From the NCBI RefSeq assembly GCF_006345805.1, contig NC_043002.1:109058001-109122000 (forward strand): a DNA stretch of 64,000 nt. The letters are read 5' to 3'. This DNA comes from Octopus sinensis (lineage: Eukaryota). Made by a program: the position numbers and the translations under genes. The notes under the pieces were generated by a model. That model saw only the letters and a list, made by a program, of their open reading frames with translations, made no database searches and had not been told where the DNA came from. This document shows, one piece after another, positions 30,102-55,324 of this stretch (within the stretch, counting starts at the first letter, position 1; every line of letters begins with the position of its first letter).

Positions 30102-30185
30102 ATGTGCAGCGAATACGAAAAACTTCGTCTGAAAAATCTCGCCGACAATCGGAGGGTTTTGGCTGAGCTGGGAATCCGTCATTCT
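30102..30185 (+). CDS. SRA-only gene exon 1 (MCSEYEKLRLKNLADNRRVLAELGIRHS)
   Basis: ATG at 30102, 28 codons, donor TCT|gtaagt, phase 0. Confidence 0.85.
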
Positions 30186-31865
30186 GTAAGTTGTTTTTCG
30201 TCCATATTAAGTTATTCTTTTCTTTGTTTCCTCTTCTTAAATTATCGGTTAAGCAGGGTTAAACCGGCTAAGCCGGTAACACACGTGCTTTTTCAATGAA
30301 GTTTTAGCTTTTATCTTTCACAAAAGCATAAATTTTCATATCTTAAGGAGATAGGGAACTTTTTCATGGTAATTTTTTTAAATATTCAATATTTTTTTAA
30401 AAACTCCTAACAAATTTATAAGTGTCATTTCTAAAATTATTTACAAAACCACAATGTTTCAAATAAGAAAATTTGTTGTTTATCAACGAATTTATTTTAA
30501 AAAGTAGAGCGAATTGCTTTACTGTAGATTTTTATGTAGATTTTAAAAAAGTTTTCGGTTGTGAAATTATTTTTAAAAAAAGAAAACGTTTCACCGCACA
30601 TCTCGTATTGTTGCAGATTCTATTTCCTGCTAAAACATTCAAAATTAATATTTTGGGGGCAAGTTGGGAAGACAGTAAATGACTAAATCAACGGCCACCT
30701 GTTTTTTTGTATTGCGGAAATGAAATAGATTGCCATAATATTTTATCTACTGCCGGCATAATGCTTTTACTAAGAGCCTCTAGTTAAGTGGTTGCTCTAC
30801 ATGATAGAAATAGTAGCCAAATCACCCTCGAAGCACACCCCATCATTTTAGAAAATAACGTCATATATTGCTATCCCTGAATCATCAGTTGATAGTGAAA
30901 AGACGAGAGGGTCACGGTTGGCATGTTCTTGATCATTGATTTACTGGATTGGAGTTGTCCTAGAGCTAAACAACATCGACCAAACTTACAACTTTTCTAA
31001 GAAAATAGCAGCTTAATCCATGCATATCACAACCCTATGTTTATAGAGCACAACAGGGGATAATGTAATCTTTGATACATTGAAGAAGAAAAAAAAGTTA
31101 CGAGATGGTCGTGGCTGGAACGTTTTTGATAATAGATCTGTCTTTACTATCGTATCGAGCCACGGTCATCTCGTCCTCATATTGGAGTCTCTCCCTCCAG
31201 ACCAGTCACTAACCACTTCGTTGCTGAGTCTTTCCTCTTGGGTGGTCGATCTTCTTGGAATCGGTTTCTGGCGCCGTGGGCACGCAATTAATTAAAGCGG
31301 GATATTGCCCATTCAGGGCTGACCTGGGTCAGCCATTCAAGTTGCATGGCAACCTCGCTAGTGTCAGTAGCACGAAAAAAAAGCACCTGGTACGTGTTGT
31401 AAATTGCTTGGTGTTAAGGGAAAGCTGGATCCTGTGATCCTATATTTCAAATACTGGCTAAATAATAACGGGTATTTGAAGAACTGTTTCATTATTTTGA
31501 AAATTGATTGCAACAAAGTGTATTTCAGCAGAAATCTGGGAACAAAACAGTTACATGATGGATGTCTGTATGTCGTGGCTTGACTTGTTGGAAATAGCAG
31601 TCAATCTCCTTCATATCATGCTATTGACTCAAGCATAATAATGAACCAGAGGCTGTCGACAATAATAATTACAGGATTTTATGGGGATCTCCCCCATAAA
31701 GACTGACAATGCTATTAAAGCAAGGAGACCGGGTATGATTGAAGAAAACAAAGGGAAAAAATAACTATATCATCATAGACTTTGCAATAGCATTTGATGA
31801 GAGATAGGGAGATTTGTGAAAGGTGACAATTATAAGCCCTAAAATTCACTCCATAATTGCCCACA

Positions 31866-32083
31866 GGCATATGGCATAGTGGTTAACCCCAAGATTCCAA
31901 GTTCAATTCCAGACAGTGACCTGAATAATAATAATAATAATATCGAAAAATACTTTAGGAATGAGAACCCAGGTTGAAAATTTCCCCAAGACACCTGATG
32001 AAGGCTGGAGGGTATATCAGCCGAAACGTTGTGTTAACAATAAACAAGATGGGGACAAATATCTGTCAAATGTAAATAATGTA
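31866..32083 (+). mobile_element. tRNA-headed short element carrying the hammerhead
   Basis: A box TGGCATAGTGG (31872-31882), B box GTTCAATTC (31901-31909), (AAT)n spacer, hammerhead, and a 3' tail also present at 2813-2891 on the minus strand. Confidence 0.65.
31990..32035 (+). ncRNA. Minimal type I hammerhead ribozyme (Penelope-type)
   Basis: GACAC (stem I) - CTGATGA - A - GGCTG [GAGGGTATAT] CAGCC (stem II) - GAAA - CG - TT - GTGTT (stem I'). Palindromic ACGT forms a loop-less stem III; predicted GUU cleavage after 32030. Confidence 0.7.
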
Positions 32084-32113
32084 TCAATTGGTCTTGTAGT
32101 AAATAGTGCACTT

Positions 32114-32353
32114 GTGGAGATGTGTGGCTTAGTGGTTAGGGTGTTGGACCCATGATCTTAAGATTGTGGTTTCGATTCCTGGGCCAGCTGACGTGTTATG
32201 TTCTTGAGCAAAACACTTCATTTCTCATTGCTCCGGTTCACTCAACCAGCAAAAATGAATAATCCTGCGACAGACCGTGGTCCTGTCCAGGTGGGGGAAT
32301 ATATATCACCATTGAAAGCAGGAAACCGGCCCTCATGAGTTTGGCATGGCTCG
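32114..32353 (+). mobile_element. tRNA-derived SINE, E head + tail 2
   Basis: E-type head followed by ggaaaccggccctcatgag...ggctcgag. Confidence 0.7.
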
Positions 32354-33890
32354 AGTGGTGGTGGGGAGCTCAGTGCACTTGGCACAATACCCAAGGTGCT
32401 ATCTATGAGGCTGAAAAGCATTAGAATTGAGATATGTATTGTTGACTTGCCTAAAAGTAGCATCCTGTATTCTGCGAGAATCAGAAGAAACATTTTTGAG
32501 ATTTGAGGAGCCTTGCTGTCACAAAGCCTCAAAACAATATCCCTGTTAACTAAATAAGTATGGCACAAGGCCAGTAATCGTGAGGGGAGGAAGTCGATTG
32601 CATTGACGCCCTACCCCCGCTTGCCTCGTATGTGACTGGTAATTGTTTACACGTTTCAGTCAATCGACTATGGCCATGCTGGAGCATACCTTTAGTCGAA
32701 GAAATTTACCCTAGGACTTATTTTTGTAGGCCTTGTACTTAATCTATCAGTCTCATTTGCTGAACTGCTAATTTTCAGGGACATAAACACACCAACATCG
32801 GTTGTCAAGCGAGGTGGGGGGGGGGGCACAGACACAATCACACACGCACACACATACATATATATACATGATGGGCTTCTTTCAGTTTTCGTCTACCGAA
32901 TTCACTCACAAGGCTTTGGTCGGCCTGAGGCTATAGTAGAAGACACTTGCCCAAGGTGCCATGCAGTGGGACTGAACCCAGAACCATGTGGTTGGAAGCA
33001 ATCTTCTTACCACACAACCACATCCTGCACCTATTTATTTTATTAAACTAGTGAAAAATAAAAAGCAAATGTGTTGAGCATTTTGTTAAATCTATTAATG
33101 ATTCTGCTTGCTCAATGCCTTATTAATAATGTTATGGGTAACCGGGTACAATGTTACTAAGCAAGAAGACAGGGTACCACTGCCGTGGCGCTTTTTCAGA
33201 CTGAGCCTGAACGGGGCTAAACATTTACAACCCTGCACAGAAAAGTTAAAATGTAGAAGAACAGCTAAACCCTGATATAACTGCTTTACTCTTTTACTTG
33301 TTTCAGTAATTTGACTGCGGCCATGCTGGAGCACCACCTTTAGTTGAGCAAATCGACCCCGGGACTTGATTCTTTGTAAGCCCAGTACTTATTCTATCGG
33401 TCTATTTTGCCGAACCGCTAAGTGACGGGGACATAAACACACCAGCATCGGTTGTCAAGCAATGCTAGAGGGACAAACACAGACACACAAACATATACAT
33501 ACACATACATACATACATATACATATAAACGACAGGCTTCTTTCAGTTTCCGTCTACCAAATCCACTCACAAGGCATTGGTCGGCCCGAGGCTATAGCAG
33601 AAGACACTTGCCCAAGATGCCACGCAGTGGGACTGAACCCAGAACCATGTGGTTGGCATGCAAGCTACTTACCACACAGCCACTCCTGCGCCTATGGCGG
33701 GAATATATTAAATGTTGTCTCTGCTGGATTCTTGATAAACTGGTGAGGAACAGCATAGGAAAAAGATGCTGCTGATCACTAATCTTGAGCAGTATTCTTT
33801 TACTAGTTTCAGTCATTTGCCAAACCACTAAGTTTTGGGGACAAATACACCAACATAGGTTATCAAGTGATGGAGAGAGGAGGGACAAAG

Positions 33891-33923
<33 letters not shown>

Positions 33924-35953
33924 CAATGGGCTTCTTTCAGTTTCCTTCTACCAAATCCACTTACAAGGTGTTGGTCGGCTTGAGGTTATAGTAGAAGACA
34001 CTTGCCCAAGGTGCCACATAGTGAGACTGAACCCAGAACCATGTGGTTCGTGAGCAAGCTACTTACCACACAGCCACTGCTGCATCTGTTTGTTTATTTT
34101 ACTTGTTTCAGTCATTTGACTGCAGCCATGCTGGAGCACCACCTTTAGTCAAACAAATCGACCCCAGGAAATATTCTTTGTAAGCCTTGTATTTATTCTA
34201 TCGGTCTCTTCTGCCAAACTGCTAGGTTCTGGGGACATAAACACACCAACACCGGTTGTCAAGCGATGAAGTGGGAAGGACGAACACAGACACAAGGACA
34301 CACACATCATCATCGTTTAACATCCGCTTTCCATGCTGGCATGGGTTAGACAGTTTGACTGCAGTTTGGAAAGCCAGTGGCTGCATCAGGCTCTGGTCAG
34401 ATCTGGCAATGTTTCTACAGCTGGATGCCCTTCCTAACACCAACCACTCCAAGAGTGTAGTGGGTGCTTTTTACGTGCCACCTGCACAGGAGCCTGGCAT
34501 CGATCACATTCAGATGGTGCTCTTAATGTGCCACCAAAATATATACATGATGCGCTTCTTTCAGTTTCCGTCTACCAGATTCATTCACAAGGCTATAATA
34601 GAAGACACTTGCCCAAGGTGTTGCGCTGTGGGACTGAACCCAGAACCATGTGGTTGGGATGCAAGCTTCTTACCATACAACCGTGCCTGTAAGTGCAACT
34701 TTTTTTTTTTTTTTTTTGCTCAGGAGCCCAGGTGGAGGGTAAAGTTAGACACAAGGGCCCAGGGGTCTGAGATGGTTAATATTCAAAGCTTAATCAAAAC
34801 CCGACATTTGGCTCTCAGGTTTACTATTATGGAAATAACCACTTCCTCAATGTTTTCAATTCCAATTTTCTAAGCATGTTCTTTGTGGAACGGTCTTCAT
34901 TTGTTTACATTTCTTCTGCTTTCTGTTCCGATGGTGACCAGCTACATGCAAATTATCATCACTGTCACTCAGCATCCAGCAAGCCAGAGGACAATCGTAT
35001 GGTTTTGTCTTTTTCATGCCAGCCATTTGGCAACACTAACCCTAGTGAGGTGACCAAGTAACTTAGAAGACAATGAGAAAAACAACCTTTAACAGAGTAG
35101 GAGGGGGTAGGTGGCTTGATGCCACATTTTAGTAAGGCAGAAGGACAGGGGCACAGGTGTCTTGCTGTAGAGGAGATATATAGCTACCTTGCATATTATA
35201 TAAAAGTGGGTAGGAAAAAACTGAAAGCACAATGATGGTGCTGACCGGGTGTCGGTGCCTACTTTCAAGGTACAAGAAGGTGAGTGTAAGAGAGGGAATG
35301 CACACGATTGGGCAGGGTGGGTGGATAAATTCCTTAGTTTGAGAGGAGAGCAACAGGTGGTTAGAGATAGGGGTAGGAGTGAATGTAGGGATGGTGGGGG
35401 TGAAGAAAAAAGGGGATAAATAGCAATAAACCCTTAGATCAGAAAATAGGGAGATGATGTGTGGGGATCGGACAGTGATGGAGGAGAATATAAGCATAAA
35501 TGCATATCTATATTTCATTTGGATTTGTAAATTTGATTTAAGAAACACACAAAATCCGTTAGATTCACTTCAACATTTAAATTTAATTTATCAAAATATT
35601 TCCATCACTTGAGACCACGACCTGTTCAGACAAAATTCCGTGCTGCATCTCAGTGAACAGGTCATGGTCTCAAAGCAACAAAAATATTTTGGCAAATTAA
35701 ATTTAAATGTTGAAGTGAATCTAACGGTTTTTGTGTTTCTTAAATGGCTTATAAACACCTTCCATGCTGCAAATGTTTTCGTTCCAGCACACAATCTTGG
35801 ATCAGGTCACTTGCTATGCAAGTACATCTCTGTAAATTTGAATGTTTAAGAAAATGAACACAGCACTTCAAATTTTCAACAAGAGAAACAATTTTGCTCT
35901 AAAATATCTTTTGCTGGAGAACCGAAAAGGTTATTTGAAACAGGAAGTCTTAC

Positions 35954-36667
35954 CGATTTGTGTTTTAATTTCTCCAAACAGATTCTCAAATCATCTGAAC
36001 TGCCATTGTCTTTTAATGTTTGAATGGTAAAACTTGGTTGCTTCAAGTTGTTGATTGGCGACTTTATAATCTTGCCGTGGCTTCCAACACCATCGGGGGT
36101 TCTCAGTTCATTTTTAGCTGCATTCAAACTCTGTAAGGAGGCGGTCATTGTTGCTGTGTCCAAGTCATTGCTTCGCATTGTCTTTACTTGATGGCTGCTG
36201 CTCTCACTCTGACCTTTTTTGTGCTTGCTGTTACCATGAGGGATAGCTGTGTGTAGTTTCTCATCTCCAAGATAGTGTACAAGCATTAATGTTCTCCTGT
36301 CATCTTTTGCATCCGCCAGGCGGTAGATGTGGCGCCTGAATCCATTAAGGCAATCACTTTTCTTGCTGCCATTTCTGTCTTTTAGACTGAAGTAGGTCTT
36401 CATAATGGCATGGCGCTTTTGACTTTTTGAATGGAAGTTGTTCCCTCTGTTAACCCACCAGTATTTATCTTTGACTCTTCTGTCATGGGGACCAGATTTG
36501 TAAAGGTAAACATCACCACCTTTGGGGAAGAGTGGTGGGGACAGTGTAATTTTCGCTGGGTCTGGGTGTCGGAGAATTGCTTCCACTTCAATGAGAAGGA
36601 AATCATCATGTTTGTTTTCTTGATATGTTAGGTTTCGGTGAGTTTCTTCAAGTAAAACCTGAGGCAT
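35954..36667 (-). CDS. Coding exon (238 aa) with a CG-1-like (CAMTA-type) DNA-binding domain
   Basis: ATG at 36667, preceded by acceptor ttcttacag| at 36731 (64-nt 5'UTR with an in-frame stop). Motifs PPLFPKGGDVYLY, KDKYWW, FRRHIYRL, LVHYLGDE, PHGNSK. Donor TCG|gtaaga at 35954 is phase 0, matching exon 26540. Unspliced, the ORF stops at 35876. Confidence 0.8.
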
Positions 36668-40611: not shown

Positions 40612-40650
<39 letters not shown>

Positions 40651-42983: not shown

Positions 42984-43133
42984 CTGGAAAAATTTCAAGT
43001 GGTTCACAAACCAATTAAACGCAAAGCACTGTGGACACCAAAGGCTTCCAAAAGATCATCTGTACCCTCTACCACAGATGAAGGTTCAGTCAGTGTTGGT
43101 GCTGTGAGGCGTTCTTGTAGATTGAGAGGAGAG
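42984..43133 (+). CDS. SRA-only gene exon 2 (LEKFQVV...VRRSCRLRGE)
   Basis: Acceptor tttccttttag|, 150 nt open, donor GAG|gtaaga, phase 0-0. Confidence 0.85.
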
Positions 43134-44214: not shown

Positions 44215-44317
44215 AAACCATCTGAAAACAATTTTATTGAACTTCTTGATGAGGATAAACCTTCTCCAGTTAAGAGAATTCCTCAGTTTCGAGAAAATAC
44301 ATTCGGTTCAATTGAAG
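44215..44317 (+). CDS. SRA-only gene exon 3 (KPSENNF...ENTFGSIE-G)
   Basis: Acceptor ttttttctag|, 103 nt, donor AAG|gtgagg, phase 0-1; FGSIEG corresponds to the start of SRA domains. Confidence 0.85.
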
Positions 44318-45332: not shown

Positions 45333-45374
<42 letters not shown>

Positions 45375-46771
45375 CACATATATATACTCACACTCACATA
45401 CACATATATATACATATATATATACTCGCACTCACATACACACATACACATAAGGATAATCATATTAAAAGAGGTCCATGGAGAAACTTGTTTAAGTAAA
45501 AATGTTGAGAACCACTGTCCTAGAAAGTTGTCCGTGCTGCAGTTTGTAGAGTTCCTGTTCAGTTTCCATCTGCCAATTCCACTTACAAAGCTGTAGTCAG
45601 CCCAGCGCTTATAGAAGACACCAATCCAGAGTGGCATACAGTGGGACTGAACCTGAAATCATGTAATTAGGGAGCAAACCTCCCACAGCCATACCTACAA
45701 ATTTATCTAATCACTAATGGATTCACATAGGGGAAACCGTTTCATCAATATTTGTTGTAAGCCTCTCAAGATATTAATCTTTAGACATATTCCCACAAGC
45801 AAGAATCTCTCTCTCTCTCTAAATACAAATGTGTTCATGTCCATTGTGATGTCTTTGCTAAAACTTCCGTTGCTACCAGCTTTTTGTCCAGACTGAAACG
45901 TATTCACACAGAAATATATAATAAAACCGAGTTTGGCAAGCAGGTTCCAGACTCCATGGAGCATCAGACAAACTTGCTTGAAATTTGGTTTCAAATTTTG
46001 GCACAAGGCCAGCAATTTGGGAAGAGGAGGTATACTCTTGTTTCAGTCAGTTGACTGCGGCCATGCTGGAGCACCACCTTTAGTCAAGCAAATCAACCCC
46101 AGGACTTATTCTTTGTAAGCCTAGTACTTATTCTATCAGTCTCTTTTGTTGAACTGCTAAGTTACGGGAACATAAACACACCAGCATTGGTTGTCAAGCG
46201 ATGTTGGGTGTGCATACACAGACACACATAGATATATACGACGGGCTTCTTTCAGTTTTCATCTATCAAATCCACTCACATGGCTTTGGTCAGCCTGAGG
46301 CTATAGTAGAGGACTCTTGACCAAGTTGCCATGCAGAGGGACTGAACCTGGAACCATGTGGTTGGTAAGCAAGCTACTTCTGCGCCTATGTCAGTTATAT
46401 TGACCCTGGCAGCATTTGAACTCAAAACATAATCAGAAGAAATGCCACTAAGCATTTTCTCTGTGGCGATAATGATTCTGCCAGCTCACCACCTGAACTT
46501 GCTTCTAATTTAGCTGTTCTGTTACATTGTGATTACCTCCCTTTATGCCTCGGTCAATTTTACTTTTCCTTGTTAGAAAGTTACCAAGAAGTAAAATTCT
46601 TGAGTCAGTGTAAGTGACCAACACCTTTGATGGTTGTTCCTCAGCATGGTTGCAATCCAGTAATTGAAACTAGTCAAAGAGTGACATAAATGTTTATTCC
46701 TTAATAAATAATAGCTTTTATTTATTACCTACCTTGTCAGTAAAATTTATCACGTTTCTTGTATCTGACAG

Positions 46772-46832
46772 GTGTAGAAGTCGGCACCTGGTGGCAGTCC
46801 CGAGTGGAGTGTAGCTATGCTGGAATCCACAG
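46772..46832 (+). CDS. SRA-only gene exon 4 (G-VEVGTWWQSRVECSYAGIH-R)
   Basis: Acceptor tctgacag|, 61 nt, donor CAG|gtaagt, phase 1-2; SRA/YDG motif. Confidence 0.92.
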
Positions 46833-47059
46833 GTAAGTTACTTGATTGTTATACTTGGAAGAGTGAGAACTTCAGTTACCAATTCACACATATTTCGGAC
46901 AAATATGCTTGTTTTGTGAACTTACAGAGAATAAGAATTTGACAGCTAAATTGATTGTTTTTGTTCTATGTGGTCACTCAACATGCTAAAGATAGCAACC
47001 AGATATCCTCTTTTCTTAAAAACAGCTGGACACATTCAATAATGTAGTTCTAGATACTC

Positions 47060-47457
47060 TTTTACTCTTGTTTCAGTCATTTGACTGCGGCCATGCTGGA
47101 GCACCGCCTTTAATCGAGCAACTCGACCCCGGGACTTATTCTCTTGTAAGCCCAGTATATGTGCTATCGGTCTCTTTTGCCGAACCGCTAAGTAACGGGG
47201 ACATAAACACACCAGCATCGGTTGTCAAACAATGCTAAGGGGACAAACACAGACACACATGCATATATATATATATATATATACATATATACGACGGGCT
47301 TCTTTTCAGTTTCCGTCTACCAAATCCACTCACAAGGCTTTGGTCGGCCTGAGGCCATAGTAGAAGACACCTGCCCAAGGTGCCACGCAGTGGGACTGAA
47401 CCCGGAACCATGTGATTGGTAAACAAGCTACTTACCACACAGCCACTCCTGCACCTA
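47060..47457 (-). mobile_element. SINE family C full-length copy
   Basis: Reverse complement of the 8628-9050 type sequence. Confidence 0.8.
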
Positions 47458-47775: not shown

Positions 47776-47994
47776 CCCTTTAATGTTCAGATTATTCAAT
47801 CAAACATAATGCCTATTGATTCACATTGATTTGAATTGATCATGCATTATCCCATATCTTCAAGATCTTGATGGTGCAATTACTTAATGTAGAATAACAT
47901 TGTAGGGTAGGTGTGAGAGCCTGGATCTGGTCAGTTTGAACATAAAACAGATTAAATATTTTGGCCGGATATGGCCGGTTTAAATACTAAAGGG
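47776..47994. mobile_element. piggyBac-like MITE
   Basis: TTAA|CCCTTTA...TAAAGGG|TTAA; related copies at about 8409-8625, 9050-9205 and 59055-59270. Confidence 0.65.
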
Positions 47995-48186
47995 TTAAAG
48001 AATTAATAAAATCCCAGAAATCTGAATGCATTCATGTATCATAAATGAGGAATACTTTATTTGGATAAGAGGGGGTCTTGTGCGTTATGCTGTCCATTCA
48101 TACACTATTTTAAATGTTTGAAAATAGTTTAGATTTGTTGCTATTGGTGGTTTTTCTTCTTTCTTAATCACACACATCTTCTTCAG

Positions 48187-48302
48187 ACCTACAGTTGCTG
48201 GTATTCATGGAAGTGAAACAGAAGGAGCATATTCTATTGCTCTGTCAGGTGGCTATGAAGATGATTTAGATTTTGGAGAATGCTTCACATACACAGGAGC
48301 AG
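48187..48302 (+). CDS. SRA-only gene exon 5 (PTVAGIHG...[19 protein letters not shown])
   Basis: Acceptor cttcttcag|, 116 nt, donor CAG|gtaggt, phase 2-1; contains the GGYEDD and FTYTG 5mC-pocket motifs. Confidence 0.95.
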
Positions 48303-48491
48303 GTAGGTTTTTCATTCATCTCTTCTAATTCACTTAATGTAGTAGTGATGGTAGAACCAGCATGACCACCACCATCAAAATGTCTGTTCTTCCTACAGAC
48401 TGGTATTGTTCCTAATCAAAGCAAATTTATCCCTCTATCATTGTATTGGGTTCAAATCCAGATGTCAATTCCATTTCATATATTTTATTAT

Positions 48492-48777
48492 GTGGAGGCG
48501 CAATGGCCTAGTGGTTAGGGCAGCGGACTCGCGGTCGTAGGATCACGGTTTCAATTCCCAGACCGGGCGTTGTGAGTGTTTATTGAGCGAAAACACCTAA
48601 AAGCTCCACGAGGCTCCGGCAGGGGGTGGTGATCCCTGCTGTACTCTTTCACCACTCTTTCTTCTGTTGGCCTGCTCGCTTAGCCAGCGGGGTGGCATCA
48701 TTCAAAGGCTAAAACAATGCGAACGCATTGTGACCAGCAATGTGTAACTACATCTGATGGACTGGATGGTGACGTGA
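48492..48777 (+). mobile_element. tRNA-derived SINE (head type D), young copy
   Basis: Near-identical to 5872-6157 over the whole length. Confidence 0.85.
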
Positions 48778-49907
48778 TGATATTTTATTATAGATTTGAA
48801 CTACTCATAACATTCCTGCAACCTACTCTACTACATATCATCCCTCATCCTCCTGTTTACCATATCATTCTTACTATTCTGCTGCTCTACTCCTGCTACC
48901 TCCCTCAATTTGTACACCATTGGTCATCTCCCACCCCTTATCCACCCTTCAGCCCCACTCAAATCTTTACATTGGTCACCTACATCACTTCACCCTTTCA
49001 TCCATCCTACTCTGTCTCCCCACTCACTTCCACTCCTCTCATACCCTGAAGGTCCGTCCATAAACTGCATCACCACACTTTTATCTTTCTTTCCAGCTTC
49101 ACACTGATCACTCACACCATCTTTTCTAAAATGTTTAGCCATGTGACTCCTCTACAGCAAGAAACCTGTTCTGCTTTGGCCCCTTCTCTCACATTTTAAC
49201 CCTCATCTAGCCGAACGTTACTTCTACTGGAGGTTCACTGTCTTGCAGGCTGCATAGTGACCTCACTAGTGCAGCTAGCATGAAAAAAAACAAAGCACTC
49301 AGCATAATCTGTAAAGTAGTTGGTGTTTGGAAAGGCATCCAGCTGCAGAAACTGTGCTTAGACATATTGGATCTTATCAAACTGTCCAACATAAGCCAGC
49401 ATAGAGCATGGACATTAAATAAGAACTTTGAGGTGAATGGGTTGTATTCCACCTAATGTGACTCTACTCAGAGTAATATCATTTGACAAGAAACCCGGTG
49501 TAAAGAATACATAAAACTAGGCTGTGACTTAATATACCTTTAATGTGGCTGCACATATATCCACCAGCTGAATGATAAATGAAAATGGTTTGATGCATGG
49601 ATGCCATAGTCTTCTGTGTGTGAATTCATATCTGCTACTGTAACAGGTTACATCTTCATAGTCTCATGTCTCAATGCAGAGATAGTCCTAAGGGTTCGTG
49701 CCAGAATCTCACACTCTAGTGCCAGTTTGTTTAAACCCACTATGGGAGTGGGGTAACTGCGCCTACAAACCAATAGTCCTTAGACCACTAGTGTAGCAAT
49801 CTAAACAGTCAACAACTGGAATATATTGTGACGTTACTTATTAGCTTTACTAAACCATTCTACATTTGTGTTGTTATCGTTGAATCCTTTCTTCTTCATA
49901 TTACCAG

Positions 49908-49945
49908 GAGGTCGAGATCTCAGAGGTACCAAAACAAATCCAAAG
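49908..49945 (+). CDS. SRA-only gene exon 6, 38-nt exon (G-GRDLRGTKTNPK)
   Basis: Acceptor catattaccag|, donor AAG|gtaagt, phase 1-0. Confidence 0.9.
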
Positions 49946-49969
49946 GTAAGTTGTATTTCTTCATTGCCA

Positions 49970-50378
49970 GGGCCGCTGACTGGCTCCCATGCCAATGGCA
50001 CTTAAAAAGCACCATTCGAGCATGATCGTTGCCAGTGTCGCCGTACTGGCACAGGTGTTGGTGGCACGTGAAAGACAACATTTGAGCGTGGTCGTTGTCA
50101 GTGCTGCCAGACTGGCTCCTGTGCAGGTGGCACACAAAAAACACCTTTTGAACGTGGCCGTTGCCAGTACCACCTGACCGGCCCTCATGCCAGTGGCATG
50201 TAAAAGCACCCACTACACTCTCGGAGTGGTTGGCGTTAGGAAGGGCATCCAGCTGTAGAAACTCTGCCAGATCAGATTGGAGCCTGGTACAGTTGCCTGG
50301 CTTGCCAGTCCTCAATCAAATTGTCTAACCCATGCCAGCATGGAAAGTGGACGTTAAACAACAATGATGATGATGATT
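49970..50378 (+). mobile_element. RTE tail copy with minisatellite units
   Basis: Same family core ending in gatgatgat. Confidence 0.7.
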
Positions 50379-50629
50379 CTGCAGGTGTATGAAGAAACAA
50401 TAATGAAAATTTCTTACAGCAACACAACCCCAAAAATGTATGAATAAAGAGAATGAAAGTTTTAGCCTTATCGCTAACTAAATTCTGTAGTTATTTTATT
50501 TTTATTGTTGGTTATTGTACTACAGCTGAAGTGTGGCTGTGTGGTTAAGAAACTTGCTTCCCAACCAGGCAGCCTTAGGTTCAGTCCCACTCTGTGGTTC
50601 CCTTGGCAAAAGTCTTCCCACAATATCCC

Positions 50630-51144
50630 CATCATCACCAACGTTGTTTAACATCCGCTTTCCATGCCAGCATGGGTTGGACGGTTTGACTGAAGACTGG
50701 AGAGACAGAAGGCTGCACCAAGTTCCAATCCCATCTGGCAAAGTTTCTACAGCCTGATGCCCTTTCTAATGCCAACTGCTCCGAGAGTGTAGCAGGTGCT
50801 TTTACATGCCACCAGCATGAGGGCCAGTCAGGCGGTACTGGCAATGACTATGCTCAGAAGGTGTTTTTTTTACGTGCCATCTTTTTTCTCAAGGTACTTA
50901 CACTCTGTTGAGTACGAACACTGACATTACACATCCATCGGAGCATACTGGCTTCATTTCTTGCGAGCTTACGCATATCCTCAGCAGTCACGGCCCATGT
51001 TTCACTACCATGTGGCATGGCTGTTCGTACACATGCATCATACAGTCTGCCTTTTACTCTGAGCGAGAGGCCTTTTGTCACCAGCAGGGGTAAGAGCTCG
51101 CTGAACTTTGTCCAGGCTATTCTTACTCTAGCATAGCAAGACAT
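50630..51144 (-). mobile_element. RTE LINE fragment joined to its 3'UTR and (GAT)n tail
   Basis: RVRIAWTKFSELLPLLVTKGLSLRVKGRLYDACVRTAMPHGSETW, followed directly by the family tail sequence. Confidence 0.85.
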
Positions 51145-52590
51145 TTAAAAGTTACGTTAAAAGTATAATAATAGTTATGATAAATGTGTAGCAAAAGATA
51201 TTGTTGATGTAGCAGATGTTGACGACAACAAAGTAAAACAAGCATTGGATTGTGGTTTAAATGATTTATTTAATCGACACTTGGATTTATGTGTGGTATA
51301 CACAAGGAAAGCTGCTACATGATGTTACCAATCTGCTTCGAGTTGGTAAAGTAAAAAATGAACTGGAGATATGCTGTGTTGATGTGATGAGGTGGAACCA
51401 GACATTTTTTGTGTCTGTGTGTGCGTTGGTCATTCGGTCATGTCTGTTTATGTTCTGTGACCGCTACTGTGTTGGGTAATTCATGCTGAATATGTGGTTC
51501 TCTGTTGTCTGCTGTCTCTTGACCATTTGCCTGTTGATGGCTATCTGTTTATCTGTCATGTGTCTGACTGTATTTATAATGGTGATCCCAGGTAAAAGGA
51601 CAAACATACCACAGGAGTAATTTCTACCTATGTAGGTTGCCTCCTGTCCACTTGAACCTTCAGTGACACTACTCAGGTCCGAGGTCAAAGGGAAATCCAT
51701 CCATCATTTTTTGACAGGTCAAAAAAATTCCTTTCGTGCCTGTTTGGCCAATGGTGGATCAGACGAGCAAGAATCCTTAGATGCAGTTTCGAATCTCAGC
51801 TTGGAAAATAAGTGTTAGCTTTTACAAATGTATTATTATAATTAATGACACTGAAAATATCAAAAATGAGACTAACTAATTTAATGTGCTAATAATTTTA
51901 ATCAATTAAGTATTATAACATTGATGTGATACTGGTTACCTACTTTTGAAGGTGCATACCATAGTGGTTAAGGTATTCGGTTCACAATCATAGGATCACG
52001 AGTTCAATTCCAGGTGTCACGTTGTGTCCTTGAGAGCAAGACACTTTATTTCACGTTGCTCCAGTCAATTCAGCTGGCAAAAATAAGTAGCACCTGTATT
52101 TCAAGGGGCCAGCCTTGTTACACTCTGTGTCACGCTGGATCTTCCTGAGAAGTATGTGAATAGGTACATGTGCCTGTAGAGTGCTCAGCCACTTACACAT
52201 TAATCTCCTGAGCAAGATGTTACATTGATTGGATCAACTGGAACCCTTGTAAGCGACAGAGTGCCAGACTTTTGCACCCCACTGTATGTGAGATATATGA
52301 GCATCACACAAACTGTTGTTCATCTCCAATCTTCTGTGATGAACATGTCTCGCCCTGGAGAAATATCACCTTCCTTGGAAACCGGTGAGGGCTGACAGCA
52401 GAAAGGGCATCAGGCTATAGAAAGTCTGCCTCAGTAAATTCCATCTGACCCATGCAAGAGTGGGAAAACGGATGTTAAATGATGATGAGATCCTTTGTTT
52501 CTTTTCTACTTTATCCATGTTTATTTTACAGAATAAACTATTGCTTACTCAAATTTTAAAACTTTCTTTTTTTTTTCCCCACCTTTTCAG

Positions 52591-52744
52591 AATTTACGAA
52601 CAGCACCACAGTCTAAAGACCAAACATTGACTCGAGGAAACTTAGCTCTGAGCCGCAACTGTGAACTAGGGAGAACTGTTAGAGTGATCCGAGGCTATAA
52701 ATCCAAGAGTGATTTTGCCCCTGAAGAAGGATATCGTTATGATG
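52591..52744 (+). CDS. SRA-only gene exon 7 (NLRTAPQSKDQ...VRVIRGY...GYRYD-G)
   Basis: Acceptor ccttttcag|, 154 nt, donor ATG|gtaagg, phase 0-1; VRVIRG and YRYDG SRA hallmarks. Confidence 0.95.
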
Positions 52745-53191
52745 GTAAGGATTATTTTATTGAGTTGGCTGAACTGGCTTTCTGAGCTTAACACTGGCAT
52801 GGCTATGTGGTTAAATTAGCTTCTCAACCTATTTCTTTACTACCCACAAGGGGCTAAACACAGAGGGGACAAACAGGGACAGACACACGGATTAAGTCGA
52901 TTATATCGACCCCAGTGTGTAACTGGTACTTAATCGACCCCGAAAGGATGAAAGGCAAAGTCAACCTCGGCGGAATTTGAACTCAGAACGTAACGGCTGA
53001 CGAAATGCGGCTACGCATTTCGCCCGGCGTGCTAACGTTTCTGCCAGCTCGCTTCTCAACCGTGTTGCTTTAGTCCCATTGCACTGTACCTTGGGCAATC
53101 ATATTCTGTTATGTTCCTGCACCATGCAAAGCCATGTGATTTAAAGTTGTTTTGCATGTATTTTTATATTTTCTTTTTCTTCATGCTACAG

Positions 53192-53301
53192 GCCTCTACA
53201 CTGTGGAAAAATACTGGTACACCATTGGTCTTTCTGGTTTCGGTGTGTGGAAATTTGCACTCCGGCGCTGTCCCAACCAAGCTCCTCCTCCATGGACTGT
53301 G
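53192..53301 (+). CDS. SRA-only gene exon 8 (LYTVEKYW...FALRRCPNQAPPPWTV)
   Basis: Acceptor atgctacag|, 110 nt, donor GTG|gtaagc, phase 1-0; ends the SRA domain with the Q.PPPW motif. Confidence 0.93.
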
Positions 53302-53500
53302 GTAAGCTGATTGTTTGACTGCTTATTATTTATTTATGCAAATGACTGCTGTAGAATAAAAGCAATGGTATAACTTTTTGATAGAGCTTCTTTGTAGTCA
53401 CTCAGGCTGCTAGAAACAGCAGCGTAGATCCCTCGAGTGCATTCTAAAGTGTTTTCTAAGTATGTTTTCAGTATTCTACGTAACATTGTTTAATGCTAGA

Positions 53501-53870
53501 CTGGAGTGGCTGTGTGGTAAGTAGCTTGCCTACCAACCACATGGTTCTGGGTTCAGTCCCACTGCAAGTGTCTATTGCTATAGCCTCGGGCCGACCAAAG
53601 CCTTGTGAGTGGATTTGGTAGACGGAAACTGAAAGAAGCCTATCGTATATATGTATGTATGTTTGTGTGTCTGTGTTTGTCCCTCTAGCATTGCTTGACA
53701 ACCGATGCTGGTGTATTTACGTCCCCGTCACTTAGCGGTTCGGCAAAATAGACCGATAGAATAAGTACTAGGCTTACAAAGAAATAAGTCCCGGGGTCGA
53801 TTTGCTCGACTAAAGGCGGTGCTCCAGCATGGCCGCAGTCAAATGACTGAAACAACTAAAAGAGTAAAAA
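53501..53870 (+). mobile_element. SINE family C copy
   Basis: Same head, core and tail as 8628-9050. Confidence 0.8.
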
Positions 53871-54337
53871 AAAAAAAAGAGTTATATGGTGTCTTACATT
53901 ATGAAGTTCTTCTCTAATGCCATCAAAGTTGGTTTAAATGACTGAAGTCATCCTCTGTGCCTAGTGTAAAGATGTGAGCAGTTTCAACTAGTGTTAAGAC
54001 CTCAGTAAGCAGTCTGGGTTACAGGTTCAATTCCTGGTTCGACCAGTTGACTTACTAAATCATACCTGGCTCAATCCGTAATAGAAACCCAAAGGTGCAT
54101 AGATAGGAGGATATGTCAGATAATAAGTGTATAACTGAAGCTGTTGTTGCCGTACATAGGTGAGCAGCAAGTCTACAATTGAGGTTTAATTGCTATGTTA
54201 GACTCTGTGATTCCGTCTACACTCCAGTGACCATGGTGATAACTACTGGTGCATAAACACTGATTCATAATAAAAACTTGATTTCTTAAAGACCCAGATG
54301 TCTGAACAGTGTGTCTGTAGTAGAATGTAAAGAGATA

Positions 54338-54810
54338 TCATCATCATTTAACGTCCACTTTCCATGCTGGCATGGGTTAGACAGTTTGACTGAGGACTGG
54401 CAATCCAGGCAGCTGTATCAGGCTCCAATCTGATCTGGCAGAGTTTCTACAGCTGGATGCCCTTCCTAACGCCAACCACTCCGAGAGTGTAGTGGGTGCA
54501 TTTGCATGCCACTGGCATGAGGGCCAGTCGGGTGGTACTGGCAACAGCCACGCTCAAATGGTGCTTTTTACATGCCACCTTCACGGGGGCCAGTCCAGCG
54601 GCACTGACAACGACCTTGCTCGATTGTTTTTTCACGTGCCACCAGCACAAGTGTCAGTAAGGCTTCGCAGGGCTAACGATCATGCTCGAATGTTGCTTTT
54701 TATGTGCCACCGGCACAGAAGCCAGTTTGTTGCTTTGGCAACGATCGCGCTGGGATGGTGCTCTTAGCGCTGCACTGGCAAGGACTAGCCAGTCATCAAA
54801 TTTGATTTTG
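54338..54810 (-). mobile_element. RTE tail copy with minisatellite units
   Basis: Same family core. Further shorter copies at about 3165-3388, 17600-17885, 18140-18365, 23815-23985, 27700-27995, 34300-34540 and 43420-43600. Confidence 0.7.
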
Positions 54811-55057
54811 ATTTCGACACCAGTTTAAAGTGCTCACATTTTTACACTAGGCACAGAAGATGACTTCGGTCATTTAAACCAACTTTGATGGAATTAGAAG
54901 AAATTCATAATGTAAGACACCATATTATAAGTCTAGCATTAAACAATGTGATGACCCAATAAAGTGAGCAATTGATATCCTTTCTTAAATTTACTGCATT
55001 GAATTATTATTTTGTCTTCATTTCTCAGGTTTCAATGATCTTTGTTCTATTTTACAG

Positions 55058-55324
55058 AAAAACCAAGATACTTTTAGTGATAAAGCAAATGAAGAATCGG
55101 ATGCTGACTCTGGTGTGGATTTGTTAGACTCTGACACAGCAAGTCAACACTCAAACAGCAGCAGTAGTAGTAGTAGTAATAAAGACAATGGATTGGATTT
55201 GGTGAAGAAAGACAACTGTGATGGTGATTCTCCTGCTGAAGAAAATGACAGTGATGAGGATGGCATGGGCAAATGTAATGAAATGACGGATAATGATGTC
55301 GATGGTGAAGATTCCAGTGTTTAA
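55058..55324 (+). CDS. SRA-only gene terminal exon 9, acidic D/E/S-rich tail
   Basis: Acceptor attttacag|, phase 0, in frame with ORF 55115-55324; 88 aa + TAA. The nine exons total 1083 nt = 360 aa + stop. Confidence 0.8.
   Translation, partial: KNQDTFSDKANEESDADSGVDLLDSDTASQHSNSSSSSSSNKDNGLDLVKKDNCDGDSPAEENDSDEDGMGKCNEMTDNDVDGEDSSV

What the first reader, a model, noticed from the sequence alone, without database searches (positions are those of the whole stretch)
30102..55324. Stand-alone SRA methyl-CpG reader with a CDCA7/WDR76-like N-terminal module: a possible second hemimethyl-DNA adaptor
Seen: nine phase-consistent exons give a 360-aa protein made of an N-terminal helix (SEYEKLRLKNLADNRRVLAELG), a basic linker ending in RRSCRLRGE, a full SRA domain and an acidic tail. 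It has no UBL, tandem Tudor, PHD or RING, so it is not canonical UHRF1. Established: the UHRF1 5mC pocket residues (human Y466, D469, Y478, T479, thumb V446) map onto GGYEDD, FTYTG and PTVAG here and are intact. A YExxRxxNIxxNxxxLxxLG helix followed by RRSxRL occurs, as I recall, in plant CDCA7 and in Cmr1/WDR76; the corresponding CDCA7 helix binds HELLS; RRSARL is the HMGN acidic-patch anchor. Inference: this may be a CDCA7-like adaptor that uses SRA rather than zf-4CXXC to sense (hemi)methylated CpG and recruit HELLS/DDM1 to nucleosomes, with a histone-chaperone-like acidic tail. It would be a non-ubiquitin-ligase branch of invertebrate methylation maintenance.
Basis: partly seen in the sequence, partly recalled or inferred. 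Interest (0 to 1): 0.8.

Follow-up and report, generated by a model that had tools for sequence, protein, structure and literature searches.

The report
Stand-alone methyl-DNA reader with remodeler-adaptor module
This octopus gene encodes a small protein that joins a methylated-DNA-reading SRA domain to a short N-terminal module also found in the two known partners of the chromatin remodeler HELLS. It belongs to an old, widespread and apparently unstudied family that may be a second way of linking DNA methylation to chromatin remodelling.

Summary
Nine + strand exons (30102-55324), all with AG/GT splice sites, give a 360-aa protein whose only Pfam domain is SAD_SRA (E=1.3e-54). It is 97% identical to an annotated 358-aa Octopus bimaculoides protein. 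No UBL, Tudor, PHD or RING exon lies in the 64 kb. Octopus has a separate canonical UHRF1, and this gene was noted in 2022 as "YDG_OCTBM".

It belongs to a conserved SRA-only family in non-vertebrate animals (sponge to amphioxus) and fungi. Members share an N-terminal helix, a KRK stretch, an invariant R-x-S-x-R motif, an SRA with intact 5mC pocket and a lengthened finger, and an acidic tail.

The N-terminal module is significantly similar to that of WDR76/Cmr1 (hhalign 96.6%). Its helix aligns on the CDCA7 HELLS-binding helix (76%, P=2e-5). A library-wide profile search finds the module before WD40, zf-4CXXC_R1, HRDC and Myb-like domains too.

Best reading: a hemimethyl-CpG reader that anchors on the nucleosome acidic patch and recruits HELLS. 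The HELLS and nucleosome steps are inferred, not tested.

Novelty: new variant of a known kind.

The parts
30102..30185 (+). Exon 1 (aa 1-28). It holds the start codon and the N-terminal amphipathic helix (aa 4-22, nt 30111-30167), sequence SEYEKLRLKNLADNRRVLAELGI.
   Evidence: ATG with an in-frame stop 9 nt upstream and a GTAAGT donor. AF2 predicts helix 4-22 at pLDDT about 90-95. N12, N16 and L20 are invariant and Y5, E6, R9 and G24 are at least 90% conserved in 61 family members.
42984..43133 (+). Exon 2 (aa 29-78). It holds a basic KRK stretch (candidate NLS) and the R-R-S-C-R-L motif (aa 70-75, nt 43107-43124).
   Evidence: Polypyrimidine tract, AG acceptor and GTAAGA donor. R70, S72 and R74 are invariant in the family. 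The spacing matches the acidic-patch contacts R363/S365/R367 of Dsup and the RRSAR of HMGN2 (PMC12487698).
44215..44317 (+). Exon 3 (aa 79-112). It holds the acidic/basic linker and the start of the SRA domain (FGSIEG).
   Evidence: It is the only candidate between exons 2 and 4 with the right phases (0 in, 1 out) that continues the SRA N-terminus. It is conserved in O. bimaculoides at 94% nt.
46772..46832 (+). Exon 4 (aa 113-133). SRA segment VEVGTWWQSRVECSYAGIHR.
   Evidence: tblastn to UHRF1 SRA. Splice sites.
48187..48302 (+). Exon 5 (aa 133-171). It holds the thumb (PTVAG) and the 5mC pocket (GGYEDD, FTYTG).
   Evidence: 67.5% identity to human UHRF1 residues 443-482, E=9e-12. Conservation in 94 members: Y156 94/94, T169 94/94, V136 93/94, D159 as D78/N16, Y168 as Y83/F11.
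49908..49945 (+). Exon 6 (aa 172-184). First half of the lengthened finger loop, GGRDLRGTKTNPK. It carries the family-specific 6-residue insertion.
   Evidence: Splice sites. 100% nt identity to O. bimaculoides. G178, T179 and P183 are invariant in 94 members.
52591..52744 (+). Exon 7 (aa 185-236). It holds NLR (equivalent to the UHRF1 NKR finger), TAPQSKDQTL and the SRA core. The UHRF1 loop of about 15 residues is absent.
   Evidence: tblastn E=1e-6. N185, L186 and R187 are 94/94. The alignment to mouse UHRF1 SRA shows the deletion.
53192..53301 (+). Exon 8 (aa 236-272). C-terminal strands of the SRA domain, ending in APPPWTV.
   Evidence: tblastn E=3e-5. AF2 pLDDT above 90.
55058..55324 (+). 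Exon 9 (aa 273-360 plus TAA). Disordered acidic, Ser-rich tail containing DSGVDLLDS (aa 289-297, nt 55106-55132).
   Evidence: Acceptor TTTTACAG, phase 0. The tail is 29% D/E and 23% S/T. pLDDT is about 50. A DSG motif occurs in 41 of 91 family tails against 8.8% of shuffled tails.

Best explanation
The locus encodes a stand-alone chromatin adaptor of a conserved opisthokont family. It is not a truncated UHRF1. The proposed mechanism has five parts. (1) The SRA domain binds CpG DNA and flips 5-methylcytosine into a UHRF1-type pocket. Because the finger Asn and Arg are kept, it probably prefers hemimethylated CpG (inferred from residue conservation). (2) The invariant R-x-S-x-R(L) motif in the disordered linker anchors the protein on the H2A-H2B acidic patch of a nucleosome, as HMGN and Dsup do (inferred from the motif match). 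(3) The N-terminal helix is the same motif as the CDCA7 HELLS-binding helix and the helix of WDR76/Cmr1. It recruits the SNF2 remodeler HELLS/LSH through its N-terminal coiled coil (inferred by homology; both characterised carriers of the helix bind HELLS). The expected result is remodelling of nucleosomes at methylated or hemimethylated DNA, giving DNMT1/UHRF1 or repair factors access, with no ubiquitin-ligase activity in the protein itself. (4) The acidic Ser-rich tail, with a DSG-type motif in many members, most likely regulates the protein through autoinhibition of the basic linker or phospho-dependent turnover (speculative). (5) The bipartite N-terminal module is mobile. It also precedes WD40, zf-4CXXC_R1, HRDC and Myb-like domains, so it would act as a common effector handle on different DNA or chromatin readers.
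For: Shown by tool results:
- The gene model and stand-alone architecture.
- The SRA fold and closest relatives. The sequence matches mouse and human UHRF1 SRA at E about 1e-47. The AF2 model superposes on the UHRF1 SRA/hemi-mCpG complex 3f8j at rmsd 1.7 A over 182 columns with 52% identity.
- Pocket, thumb and finger residues are conserved in 94 members.
- The family spans sponge, cnidarians, molluscs, annelids, brachiopod, echinoderms, hemichordates, amphioxus, crustaceans, chelicerates, a thrips, chytrids, Glomeromycota and Agaricomycetes. The N-terminal module is present in 119 of 120 agaric members.
- The module compared with WDR76: HMM E=1.4e-7 to 1.4e-5 at Z=20000 over profile positions 4-81, and hhalign 96.6%, E=5.7e-10.
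- The helix compared with the CDCA7 HLBH: hhalign 76%, P=2.2e-5, in exact register.
- The shared pattern [FY]x3Rx2N[ILVM]x2Nx3[LFM]x2[LIM] is expected about 0.3 times per proteome.
- The profile search of 1.84 billion representatives gave 1261 clusters at E<=1e-3. These include module+WD40 (P0327), module+zf-4CXXC_R1 (chytrid P0374), module+HRDC (P0289, P0293) and module+Myb-like (green alga, P0338).

From the literature:
- Deleting the CDCA7 helix abolishes HELLS binding, and the N-terminal part suffices for it (PMC11343034).
- The WDR76-LSH interaction is conserved in Neurospora, yeast and human (PMC4714748).
- The WDR76 N-terminal half binds histones (bioRxiv 10.1101/650028; PMC11331135).
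- Cryo-EM shows RRSAR / RRSSRL on the acidic patch, with contacts at R, S and R in the spacing that is invariant here (PMC12487698).
- The SRA-only Uhrf1 of Cryptococcus binds hemimethylated DNA and promotes 5mC without an E3 domain (bioRxiv 10.1101/149385).
Against: - Similarity to vertebrate CDCA7 is confined to about 20 residues and is not significant by HMM alone (5-11 bits). WDR76 and CDCA7 do not match each other directly (hhalign 5%).
- The region of WDR76 that binds HELLS has not been mapped. The WDR76-HELLS interaction is salt-labile.
- The finger loop is 6 residues longer than in UHRF1, with Leu in place of Lys490, and S481 is Ala/Glu. Specificity could therefore differ (fully methylated CpG, 5hmC, non-CpG or lesions).
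- Macchi et al. [quoted passage not shown] My alignments disagree, but this is unresolved by experiment.
- The AF2 monomer model suggests that residues 33-36 pair with a strand at 270-273, so the N-terminus may dock on the SRA domain rather than be free.
- The presence of HELLS and CDCA7 in this octopus genome was not checked.
Confidence: 0.5

Rival explanations
1. It is a plain methyl-DNA reader or competitor. The SRA domain binds (hemi)methylated CpG and the N-terminal module only provides nuclear import and nucleosome tethering. The protein then acts by occupying sites, protecting them or competing with UHRF1/DNMT1, or by bridging to DNMT1 or DNMT5 directly, without HELLS.
For: The SRA pocket is intact. 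The KRK stretch and RxSxR motif suffice for nuclear and nucleosome targeting. The Cryptococcus SRA-only Uhrf1 works with Dnmt5 with no reported HELLS link. The WDR76 N-terminus binds histones and many partners other than HELLS.
Against: This does not explain why the helix, with invariant Asn, Asn and Leu on one face, is kept from fungi to amphioxus. It also does not explain why the same helix is the mapped HELLS-binding element of CDCA7 and occurs in the other conserved HELLS partner, WDR76.
Confidence: 0.22
2. It is a genome-stability factor of the WDR76/Cmr1 kind. The SRA domain recognises flipped or damaged bases (or 5hmC, or crosslinks) rather than serving methylation maintenance, and the module connects it to the same replication-stress or repair machinery as WDR76.
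For: The module matches WDR76 far better than CDCA7 (against 37). WDR76/Cmr1 and LSH/MUS-30 act in DNA-damage tolerance independently of 5mC in Neurospora. The module also occurs with HRDC domains, which are typical of RecQ-type repair proteins. The finger loop differs from that of UHRF1.
Against: The 5mC-pocket residues are under strong constraint. No member from Diptera, nematodes or Saccharomycotina, lineages known from general knowledge to lack 5mC, appears among the 240 listed homologs. That is suggestive only. This rival is partly compatible with the best explanation, since HELLS could still be the partner.
Confidence: 0.15
3. It is a substrate receptor or adaptor for a cullin ligase. 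The N-terminal helix is a DDB1-binding (H-box-like) helix, as might be expected in the DCAF protein WDR76, so the SRA protein would bring CRL4 ubiquitin-ligase activity to methylated DNA in trans.
For: WDR76 is described as a CUL4-DDB1-associated WD40 protein (mentioned in bioRxiv 10.1101/650028). The helix ends in L-x-x-LGL, loosely reminiscent of H-box helices (my own recollection, not tested).
Against: CDCA7, HRDC and Myb-type carriers are not DCAFs. In CDCA7 the helix is mapped to HELLS. The spacing of the hydrophobic residues does not match the H-box sequences I recall. No tool result supports DDB1 binding.
Confidence: 0.05
4. It is a decaying partial duplicate of UHRF1, or a mis-assembled gene fragment, with no function of its own.
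For: Databases name it 'E3 ubiquitin-protein ligase UHRF1'. It lacks four of the five UHRF1 domains.
Against: The reading frame is intact. Between two octopus species there are 35 nucleotide differences but only 9 amino-acid changes. Orthologs with the same architecture exist across animal phyla and fungi, with more than 40 invariant positions. Family-specific features are absent from UHRF1 (N-terminal module, finger insertion).
Confidence: 0.02

Closest known systems
UHRF1 (Np95/ICBP90), SRA domain
   Same: It has the same fold and the closest sequence among solved structures: about 50% identity, E about 1e-47, rmsd 1.7 A to the hemi-mCpG complex. The pocket residues Tyr, Asp, Tyr and Thr, the thumb Val-Ala-Gly and the finger Asn and Arg are conserved.
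   Different: It has no UBL, tandem Tudor, PHD or RING, so no intrinsic E3 activity or histone-mark reading. The finger is 6 residues longer, with Leu for Lys490. The UHRF1 loop of about 15 residues is deleted. It carries an N-terminal module and an acidic tail that UHRF1 lacks. Octopus has a separate full UHRF1.
CDCA7 (ICF3 protein), hemimethylated-DNA adaptor of HELLS
   Same: The logic is the same: a short N-terminal helix plus a basic disordered linker plus a C-terminal sensor of (hemi)methylated CpG. The helix aligns in register with the HELLS-binding helix FLEKRALNIKQNKAMLAKL. A chytrid zf-4CXXC_R1 protein has the family-type helix.
   Different: The sensor is an SRA base-flipping domain, not zf-4CXXC_R1. 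There is no Pfam zf-4CXXC_R1 hit. Similarity to vertebrate CDCA7 is limited to about 20 residues. HELLS binding is unproven here.
WDR76 / yeast Cmr1 / Neurospora WDR76
   Same: It has the same bipartite N-terminal module, helix SxYExxRLKNIxxN...L plus KRK plus RRSxRL, at similar spacing. WDR76 is a conserved partner of HELLS/LSH/MUS-30 and binds histones through its N-terminal half.
   Different: The C-terminal domain is SRA instead of a WD40 propeller, so target recognition is different. WDR76 has no methyl-cytosine pocket.
HMGN proteins and tardigrade Dsup (RRSARLSA-type nucleosome-binding motif)
   Same: The R-R-S-x-R-L core is shared. The family-invariant R, S and R have the spacing of the Dsup residues that contact the H2A-H2B acidic patch.
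   Different: There is no other similarity to HMGN or Dsup. Here the motif is one element of a larger adaptor. Binding was not tested.
Cryptococcus neoformans Uhrf1/Uhf1 (CNAG_00677)
   Same: It is an SRA-only protein lacking Tudor and RING. It binds hemimethylated DNA in vitro and promotes maintenance 5mC in parallel with H3K9 methylation. Basidiomycete members of the present family are general in Agaricomycetes.
   Different: Whether CNAG_00677 carries the N-terminal module, and so belongs to this family, could not be tested. It works with Dnmt5, which animals lack.

Membership tests
UHRF1/UHRF2 E3 ubiquitin ligases | SRA (SAD_SRA) domain | tested here: met
   Pfam PF02182 E=1.3e-54. The closest PDB sequences and folds are UHRF1 SRA.
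UHRF1/UHRF2 E3 ubiquitin ligases | UBL, tandem Tudor, PHD and RING domains in the same protein | tested here: not met
   No other Pfam domain at E<=1. tblastn with human UHRF1 finds no such exon in 64 kb. The O. bimaculoides ortholog is annotated as 358 aa with SRA only, and its neighbours are unrelated genes. So the database name 'E3 ubiquitin-protein ligase UHRF1' is a misnomer.
SAD/SRA 5mC base-flipping readers | Conserved 5mC pocket (Tyr466, Asp469, Tyr478, Thr479 and Gly465 equivalents), thumb and finger | tested here: met
   Y156, D159, Y168, T169, G155, V136, N185 and R187 are present in the octopus protein. Each is kept in 78-94 of 94 family members, or in all 94 when D/N and Y/F replacements are counted. 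S481 is Ala in octopus and Glu in most members. K490 is Leu.
SAD/SRA 5mC base-flipping readers | Preferential binding of methylated or hemimethylated DNA | not testable with these tools
   This needs EMSA or fluorescence polarisation with un-, hemi- and fully methylated and 5hmC probes.
SRA-only family with N-terminal module (unnamed; 'YDG domain-containing protein', YDG_OCTBM) | N-terminal helix SxYExxRxxN[IL]xxNxxxLxxLG within the first ~40 residues | tested here: met
   Residues 3-25. N12, N16 and L20 are invariant in 61 members. AF2 predicts the helix at pLDDT about 90-95.
SRA-only family with N-terminal module (unnamed; 'YDG domain-containing protein', YDG_OCTBM) | R-x-S-x-R motif 40-90 residues after the helix, then an SRA with the finger G-T-x-x-x-P-K-N-L-R-T-A, then an acidic tail | tested here: met
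   RRSCRL at 70-75. GTKTNPKNLRTA at 178-189, with invariant G, T, P, N, L, R and A. The tail is 29% D/E against a family median of 26%.
CDCA7 family | zf-4CXXC_R1 (hemimethyl-CpG zinc finger) domain | tested here: not met
   No PF10497 hit. It is therefore not a CDCA7 family member, whatever the functional analogy.
CDCA7 family | HELLS-binding helix (HLBH) | tested here: inconclusive
   hhalign gives 76% probability, P=2.2e-5, in exact register over 20 columns. HMM scores on vertebrate CDCA7 are only 5-11 bits. A chytrid zf-4CXXC_R1 protein has the family-type helix at library-wide E=4e-7. Binding to HELLS was not tested.
WDR76/Cmr1 family | C-terminal seven-bladed WD40 propeller | tested here: not met
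   No WD40 hit.
WDR76/Cmr1 family | N-terminal helix + basic stretch + RRSxRL module | tested here: met
   HMM E=1.4e-7 to 1.4e-5 (Z=20000) over profile positions 4-81. hhalign 96.6%, E=5.7e-10.
HMGN-like nucleosome acidic-patch binders | RRSAR(L)-type arginine-anchor motif | tested here: met
   RRSCRL is present. R70, S72 and R74 are invariant, with the same spacing as the Dsup contacts R363, S365 and R367.
HMGN-like nucleosome acidic-patch binders | Acidic-patch-dependent nucleosome binding | not testable with these tools
   This needs nucleosome EMSA or pull-down with acidic-patch mutants. The cited paper notes that AF3 models of such motifs are unreliable.

The most novel reading that the evidence does not exclude
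The bipartite N-terminal module (HLBH-type helix plus R-x-S-x-R acidic-patch anchor) is an ancient, mobile 'HELLS/DDM1-and-nucleosome handle' that evolution has attached to at least five different DNA or chromatin readers: SRA, zf-4CXXC_R1, the WD40 of WDR76, HRDC and Myb-like. If so, HELLS would be a multi-adaptor remodeler. Most non-vertebrate animals and many fungi would have two parallel hemimethyl-CpG sensors feeding it (CDCA7 through a zinc finger, this family through SRA), and the SRA route would have been lost in vertebrates.
Probability: 0.35. Interest if true: 0.85.

Novelty: new variant of a known kind. Interest (0 to 1): 0.7.

Why it matters
It is an open question why CDCA7-HELLS is the only remodeler tied to maintenance methylation, and how hemimethylated CpGs inside nucleosomes are made accessible. 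A second, base-flipping sensor carrying the same remodeler-binding helix would make that question testable in new systems. Candidates are oyster, sea urchin, Nematostella, amphioxus, Daphnia and Coprinopsis.

It would also explain the many 'UHRF1 homologs without RING' that comparative surveys have set aside. It would give a rationale for the conserved but unexplained WDR76-HELLS interaction, through a shared helix.

On the practical side, it flags a systematic mis-annotation. Hundreds of these proteins are named 'E3 ubiquitin-protein ligase UHRF1/ORTHRUS', which inflates the inferred presence of UHRF1 in phyletic studies of methylation machinery.

Tried and rejected
1. I looked for UBL, Tudor, PHD and RING exons anywhere in the window with human UHRF1 (sequence recalled from memory; its numbering of the known pocket residues checked out). 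Only the SRA exons hit.
2. I searched PDB sequences with the N-terminal profile. Only weak matches to the C-terminus of ribosomal protein L20 came up (NIxxNRKVLSEL, E=0.005). I regard these as chance or convergent, and there was no informative structure.
3. The HMM of the module against vertebrate CDCA7 is not significant on its own (5-11 bits). The CDCA7 link rests on the profile-profile alignment and on the chytrid zf-4CXXC_R1 protein.
4. I tried to place the experimentally studied Cryptococcus Uhf1 in the family by searching with a basidiomycete member. The list was saturated by Agaricomycetes and Cryptococcus was not among the 120 shown, so this remains untested.
6. I considered and rejected the reading as a UHRF1 pseudogene or fragment, on the grounds of conservation and family-specific features.
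7. The histone-chaperone idea for the tail has no conserved sequence behind it apart from a DSG motif, so it stays speculative.
8. Literature searches for 'SRA-only', HLBH and similar terms found no description of this family or of the shared module. Absence from the held library is not proof that none exists.

Full report
**Observation**

The window is eukaryotic DNA, about 39% G+C, with long introns full of repeats. It is colinear at 85-94% nucleotide identity with a stretch of Octopus bimaculoides chromosome CM046606.1. It therefore probably comes from a congeneric octopus.

I rebuilt the gene from stop-to-stop frames, a tblastn seed and an exhaustive search for the one missing exon. Nine + strand exons resulted, at 30102-30185, 42984-43133, 44215-44317, 46772-46832, 48187-48302, 49908-49945, 52591-52744, 53192-53301 and 55058-55324. 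Every internal boundary is AG/GT behind a polypyrimidine tract, and the phases fit. The product is 360 aa and ends in TAA. An in-frame stop lies 9 nt upstream of the ATG.

Each exon has an equal-length counterpart in O. bimaculoides, at 96.8% identity overall. There are 35 nucleotide differences but only 9 amino-acid changes, plus a 2-Ser indel in the tail. The exons span exactly the gene annotated there for a 358-aa protein.

**What the protein is**

Pfam finds a single domain, SAD_SRA, at residues 108-265 with E=1.3e-54. The closest solved sequences are the SRA domains of mouse and human UHRF1 (E about 1e-47), followed by UHRF2 and the plant SUVH proteins.

An AlphaFold2 model built on 94 family sequences has pLDDT above 90 over the SRA core. 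It superposes on the mouse UHRF1 SRA/hemimethylated-CpG complex at 1.7 A over 182 columns.

The residues that hold the flipped 5-methylcytosine in UHRF1 map as follows:
- Y466, D469, Y478, T479 and G465 map to Y156, D159, Y168, T169 and G155.
- The thumb V446-A-G448 maps to V136-A-G138.
- The finger N489 and R491 map to N185 and R187.

Across 94 members these positions are invariant or show only D/N and Y/F replacements. There are also differences from UHRF1:
- The finger is six residues longer (GTKTNPK-NLR-TA against G-NKR-TA).
- Leu replaces Lys490. This Leu and the flanking P-K-N and R-T-A are invariant in the family.
- S481 is Ala here and Glu in most members.
- A UHRF1 loop of about 15 residues is missing.

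No UBL, Tudor, PHD or RING is present in the protein. None lies anywhere in the 64 kb. The O. bimaculoides neighbours are an antisense gene without a Pfam domain and a downstream glycosyl-hydrolase-31 gene.

Octopus has a separate, complete UHRF1 with UBL, TTD, PHD, SRA and RING. The present gene was mentioned in the same paper as 'YDG_OCTBM', a shorter SRA protein said to lack key UHRF1 residues (PMC9476566 and its supplement). My alignments do not bear out that last statement. The finger insertion probably misled a whole-protein alignment.

**The family**

The homolog search returns proteins of about 290-510 aa that contain only an SRA domain. They come from cephalopods, gastropods, bivalves, annelids, a brachiopod, a nemertean, a bryozoan, echinoderms, hemichordates, amphioxus, cnidarians, a calcareous sponge, Daphnia, a barnacle, a thrips, spiders and sea spiders, and also from Glomeromycota and chytrids. 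A second search seeded with a basidiomycete member shows the family to be general in Agaricomycetes.

No vertebrate, dipteran, nematode or budding-yeast protein is among the 240 listed. Source databases call these proteins 'E3 ubiquitin-protein ligase UHRF1(-like)', 'ORTHRUS', 'PUA-like' or 'YDG domain-containing'.

All share one plan:
- an N-terminal helix, consensus SxYExxRLKNIExNxRxLxxLGL, with N12, N16 and L20 invariant and Y5, E6, R9 and G24 at least 90% conserved;
- a KRK-rich stretch;
- an R-R-S-x-R-L-x-G motif with R70, S72 and R74 invariant;
- a short acidic linker;
- the SRA with the long finger;
- a non-conserved acidic, Ser/Thr-rich tail (median 26% D/E, 6-254 residues).

119 of 120 agaric members carry the N-terminal module. 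AlphaFold predicts the helix (residues 4-22) with pLDDT about 90-95. The linker and the tail are predicted disordered.

**The N-terminal module elsewhere**

I fetched real sequences of both with one chimeric query and tested the likeness in three ways.

First, an HMM of 61 family N-termini was run against the fetched sequences. It hits the three WDR76 N-terminal fragments at E=1.4e-7 to 1.4e-5 for a proteome-sized search. The alignment runs over nearly the whole profile, covering both the helix and RRSMRL. On vertebrate CDCA7 the same HMM aligns only its helix core, always on FLEKRALNIKQNKAMLAKL, at an insignificant 5-11 bits.

Second, profile-profile comparison gave these results:
- family against WDR76: 96.6% probability, E=5.7e-10;
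- family against the CDCA7 helix region: 76%, P=2.2e-5, in exact register;
- WDR76 against CDCA7: only 5%.

The SRA family therefore bridges the other two. The shared pattern [FY]x3Rx2N[ILVM]x2Nx3[LFM]x2[LIM] is expected about 0.3 times in a human-sized proteome.

Third, the profile was searched against 1.84 billion representative proteins. It finds 1261 clusters at E<=1e-3. Besides SRA proteins and many short fragments, the best 150 include the following, identified by Pfam and source names:
- the module in front of a WD40 propeller (P0327);
- a zf-4CXXC_R1 domain in the chytrid Homolaphlyctis (P0374; helix and linker only);
- HRDC domains in marine protists (P0289, P0293);
- a Myb-like domain in the green alga Cymbomonas (P0338);
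- proteins with the module repeated in tandem.

The module is thus a mobile unit attached to several different nucleic-acid or chromatin-binding domains. No Pfam model covers it.

**What the module is likely to do**

In CDCA7 the corresponding helix is the 'HELLS-binding helix'. AlphaFold places it on the CC2 helix of HELLS/DDM1 in animals and plants. Deleting it abolishes HELLS binding, and the N-terminal part alone suffices (PMC11343034; PMC12718391).

WDR76 is the other conserved partner of this remodeler. MUS-30/LSH co-purifies reciprocally with WDR76 in Neurospora and interacts with it genetically. Cmr1-Irc5 in yeast and WDR76-HELLS in human are also reported (PMC4714748). The N-terminal half of WDR76 carries its histone binding (bioRxiv 10.1101/650028; PMC11331135).

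The second element, R-R-S-x-R-L, equals the core of the HMGN/Dsup nucleosome-binding motif. Cryo-EM shows Dsup R363, S365 and R367 and HMGN2 R23 and R26 on the H2A-H2B acidic patch (PMC12487698). The three invariant family positions (R70, S72, R74) have exactly the Dsup spacing, while the intervening positions vary.

From this I infer a three-point adaptor. The SRA sits on methylated (probably hemimethylated) CpG, R-x-S-x-R sits on the acidic patch, and the helix sits on HELLS. None of the three contacts was tested here. The nearest experimental precedent for an SRA-only protein is Cryptococcus Uhrf1, which binds hemimethylated DNA and supports maintenance methylation without any E3 domain (bioRxiv 10.1101/149385). 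I could not establish whether it has the module.

**Rivals**

There are four rival readings:
- A reader that works without HELLS, by tethering or competition. This cannot be excluded, but it leaves the conserved polar face of the helix unexplained.
- A WDR76-like genome-stability role. This is favoured by the stronger WDR76 match and the HRDC relatives, and it is partly compatible with HELLS recruitment.
- A DDB1/CRL4 adaptor role for the helix. This rests only on WDR76 being a DCAF and is contradicted by the CDCA7 data.
- A decaying UHRF1 fragment. This is refuted by conservation.

The description is accurate. The interpretive leads (WDR76/CDCA7-type helix, HMGN-type anchor) survive testing.

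Corrections are as follows. The WDR76 link is strong and the CDCA7 link moderate. The family is not confined to invertebrates. The gene is already annotated and was briefly noted in 2022. The tail's role is unknown, although 41 of 91 tails contain a DSG motif (8.8% in shuffles) in a context resembling a beta-TrCP phosphodegron. Octopus has DSGVDLLDS.

**Novelty**

The gene and the existence of 'UHRF1 homologs without RING' are on record (PMC9476566; PMC10538959). I found no paper that describes the family's architecture or the shared module.

I class it as a new variant of a known kind. It combines known modules (an SRA reader and an HLBH-type adaptor helix) in a way that has not been characterised, and it carries a directly testable mechanistic prediction.

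Noticed in passing
window 35876-36667 (- strand), inside intron 1 of the SRA gene: A 263-aa open reading frame gives a marginal Pfam CG-1 (CAMTA-type DNA-binding) hit (E=3.4e-5, 24.0 bits against a cutoff of 23.5). It is 93% identical to the first coding exon of an annotated 683-aa antisense gene in O. bimaculoides (L001 5487-16480, -). That gene overlaps the 5' end of the SRA gene and has no Pfam domain on record.
   Followed up: partly
window 8651-9071, 32646-33044, 46037-46379, 47055-47452, 53503-53875: At least five copies of one ~380-bp interspersed repeat lie in both orientations. All match the same two intervals of the O. bimaculoides locus (L001 355-728 and 37118-37517) at 80-90% identity. 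The copies account for recurring pseudo-ORFs such as 'FQSFDCGHAGAPPLV...' in the introns.
   Followed up: no
window 50854-51144 (- strand), intron between exons 6 and 7: A 96-aa ORF ('...RVKGRLYDACVRTAMPHGSETWAVTAEDMRKL...') looks to me like the C-terminal part of a non-LTR retrotransposon reverse transcriptase, probably a degraded fragment. This is from recollection only and was not tested.
   Followed up: no
window 55106-55132 (aa 289-297) and family tails: A DSG motif sits in the acidic tail, with family consensus SDSG[FVI][DSE]S[DE]. It occurs in 41 of 91 tails against 8.8% of shuffled tails. It resembles a beta-TrCP phosphodegron. In octopus the second Ser is displaced (DSGVDLLDS).
   Followed up: partly
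window 55148-55168 region (Ser run, aa 303-312): The poly-Ser run in the tail differs in length between the window (7 Ser after N) and O. bimaculoides (5 Ser). This is the only indel in the coding sequence.
   Followed up: no
residues 10-49 of the N-terminal profile (A1): The profile weakly matches the C-terminal helix of bacterial, organellar and mitochondrial ribosomal protein L20 (NIxxNRKVLSELAxxEP; best E=0.005 in PDB). This is probably a chance or convergent helix-cap motif.
   Followed up: no
AF2 model, residues 33-36 and 270-273: The model pairs a short strand just after the N-terminal helix (VVHK; family consensus PxVxKK) with the strand that follows the SRA domain (WTVK), at pLDDT about 70-75. 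This hints that the N-terminus docks on the SRA domain, which could be autoinhibition or simply part of the fold.
   Followed up: no
P0258 (Cylindrobasidium torrendii, 1058 aa) and P0249 (1137 aa): Two long proteins carry the module directly before an SRA, behind unrelated N-terminal parts (DUF7923 + CCCH zinc finger in P0258). In P0258 a Met precedes the helix ('MALSEYEK'), so this may be a gene-model fusion rather than a real architecture.
   Followed up: partly
database annotation of P0001-P0120 and P0400-P0519: Many members of this RING-less family are named 'E3 ubiquitin-protein ligase UHRF1', 'UHRF1-like' or 'ORTHRUS' by automatic pipelines. This can create false UHRF1 presence calls in comparative studies.
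   Followed up: yes
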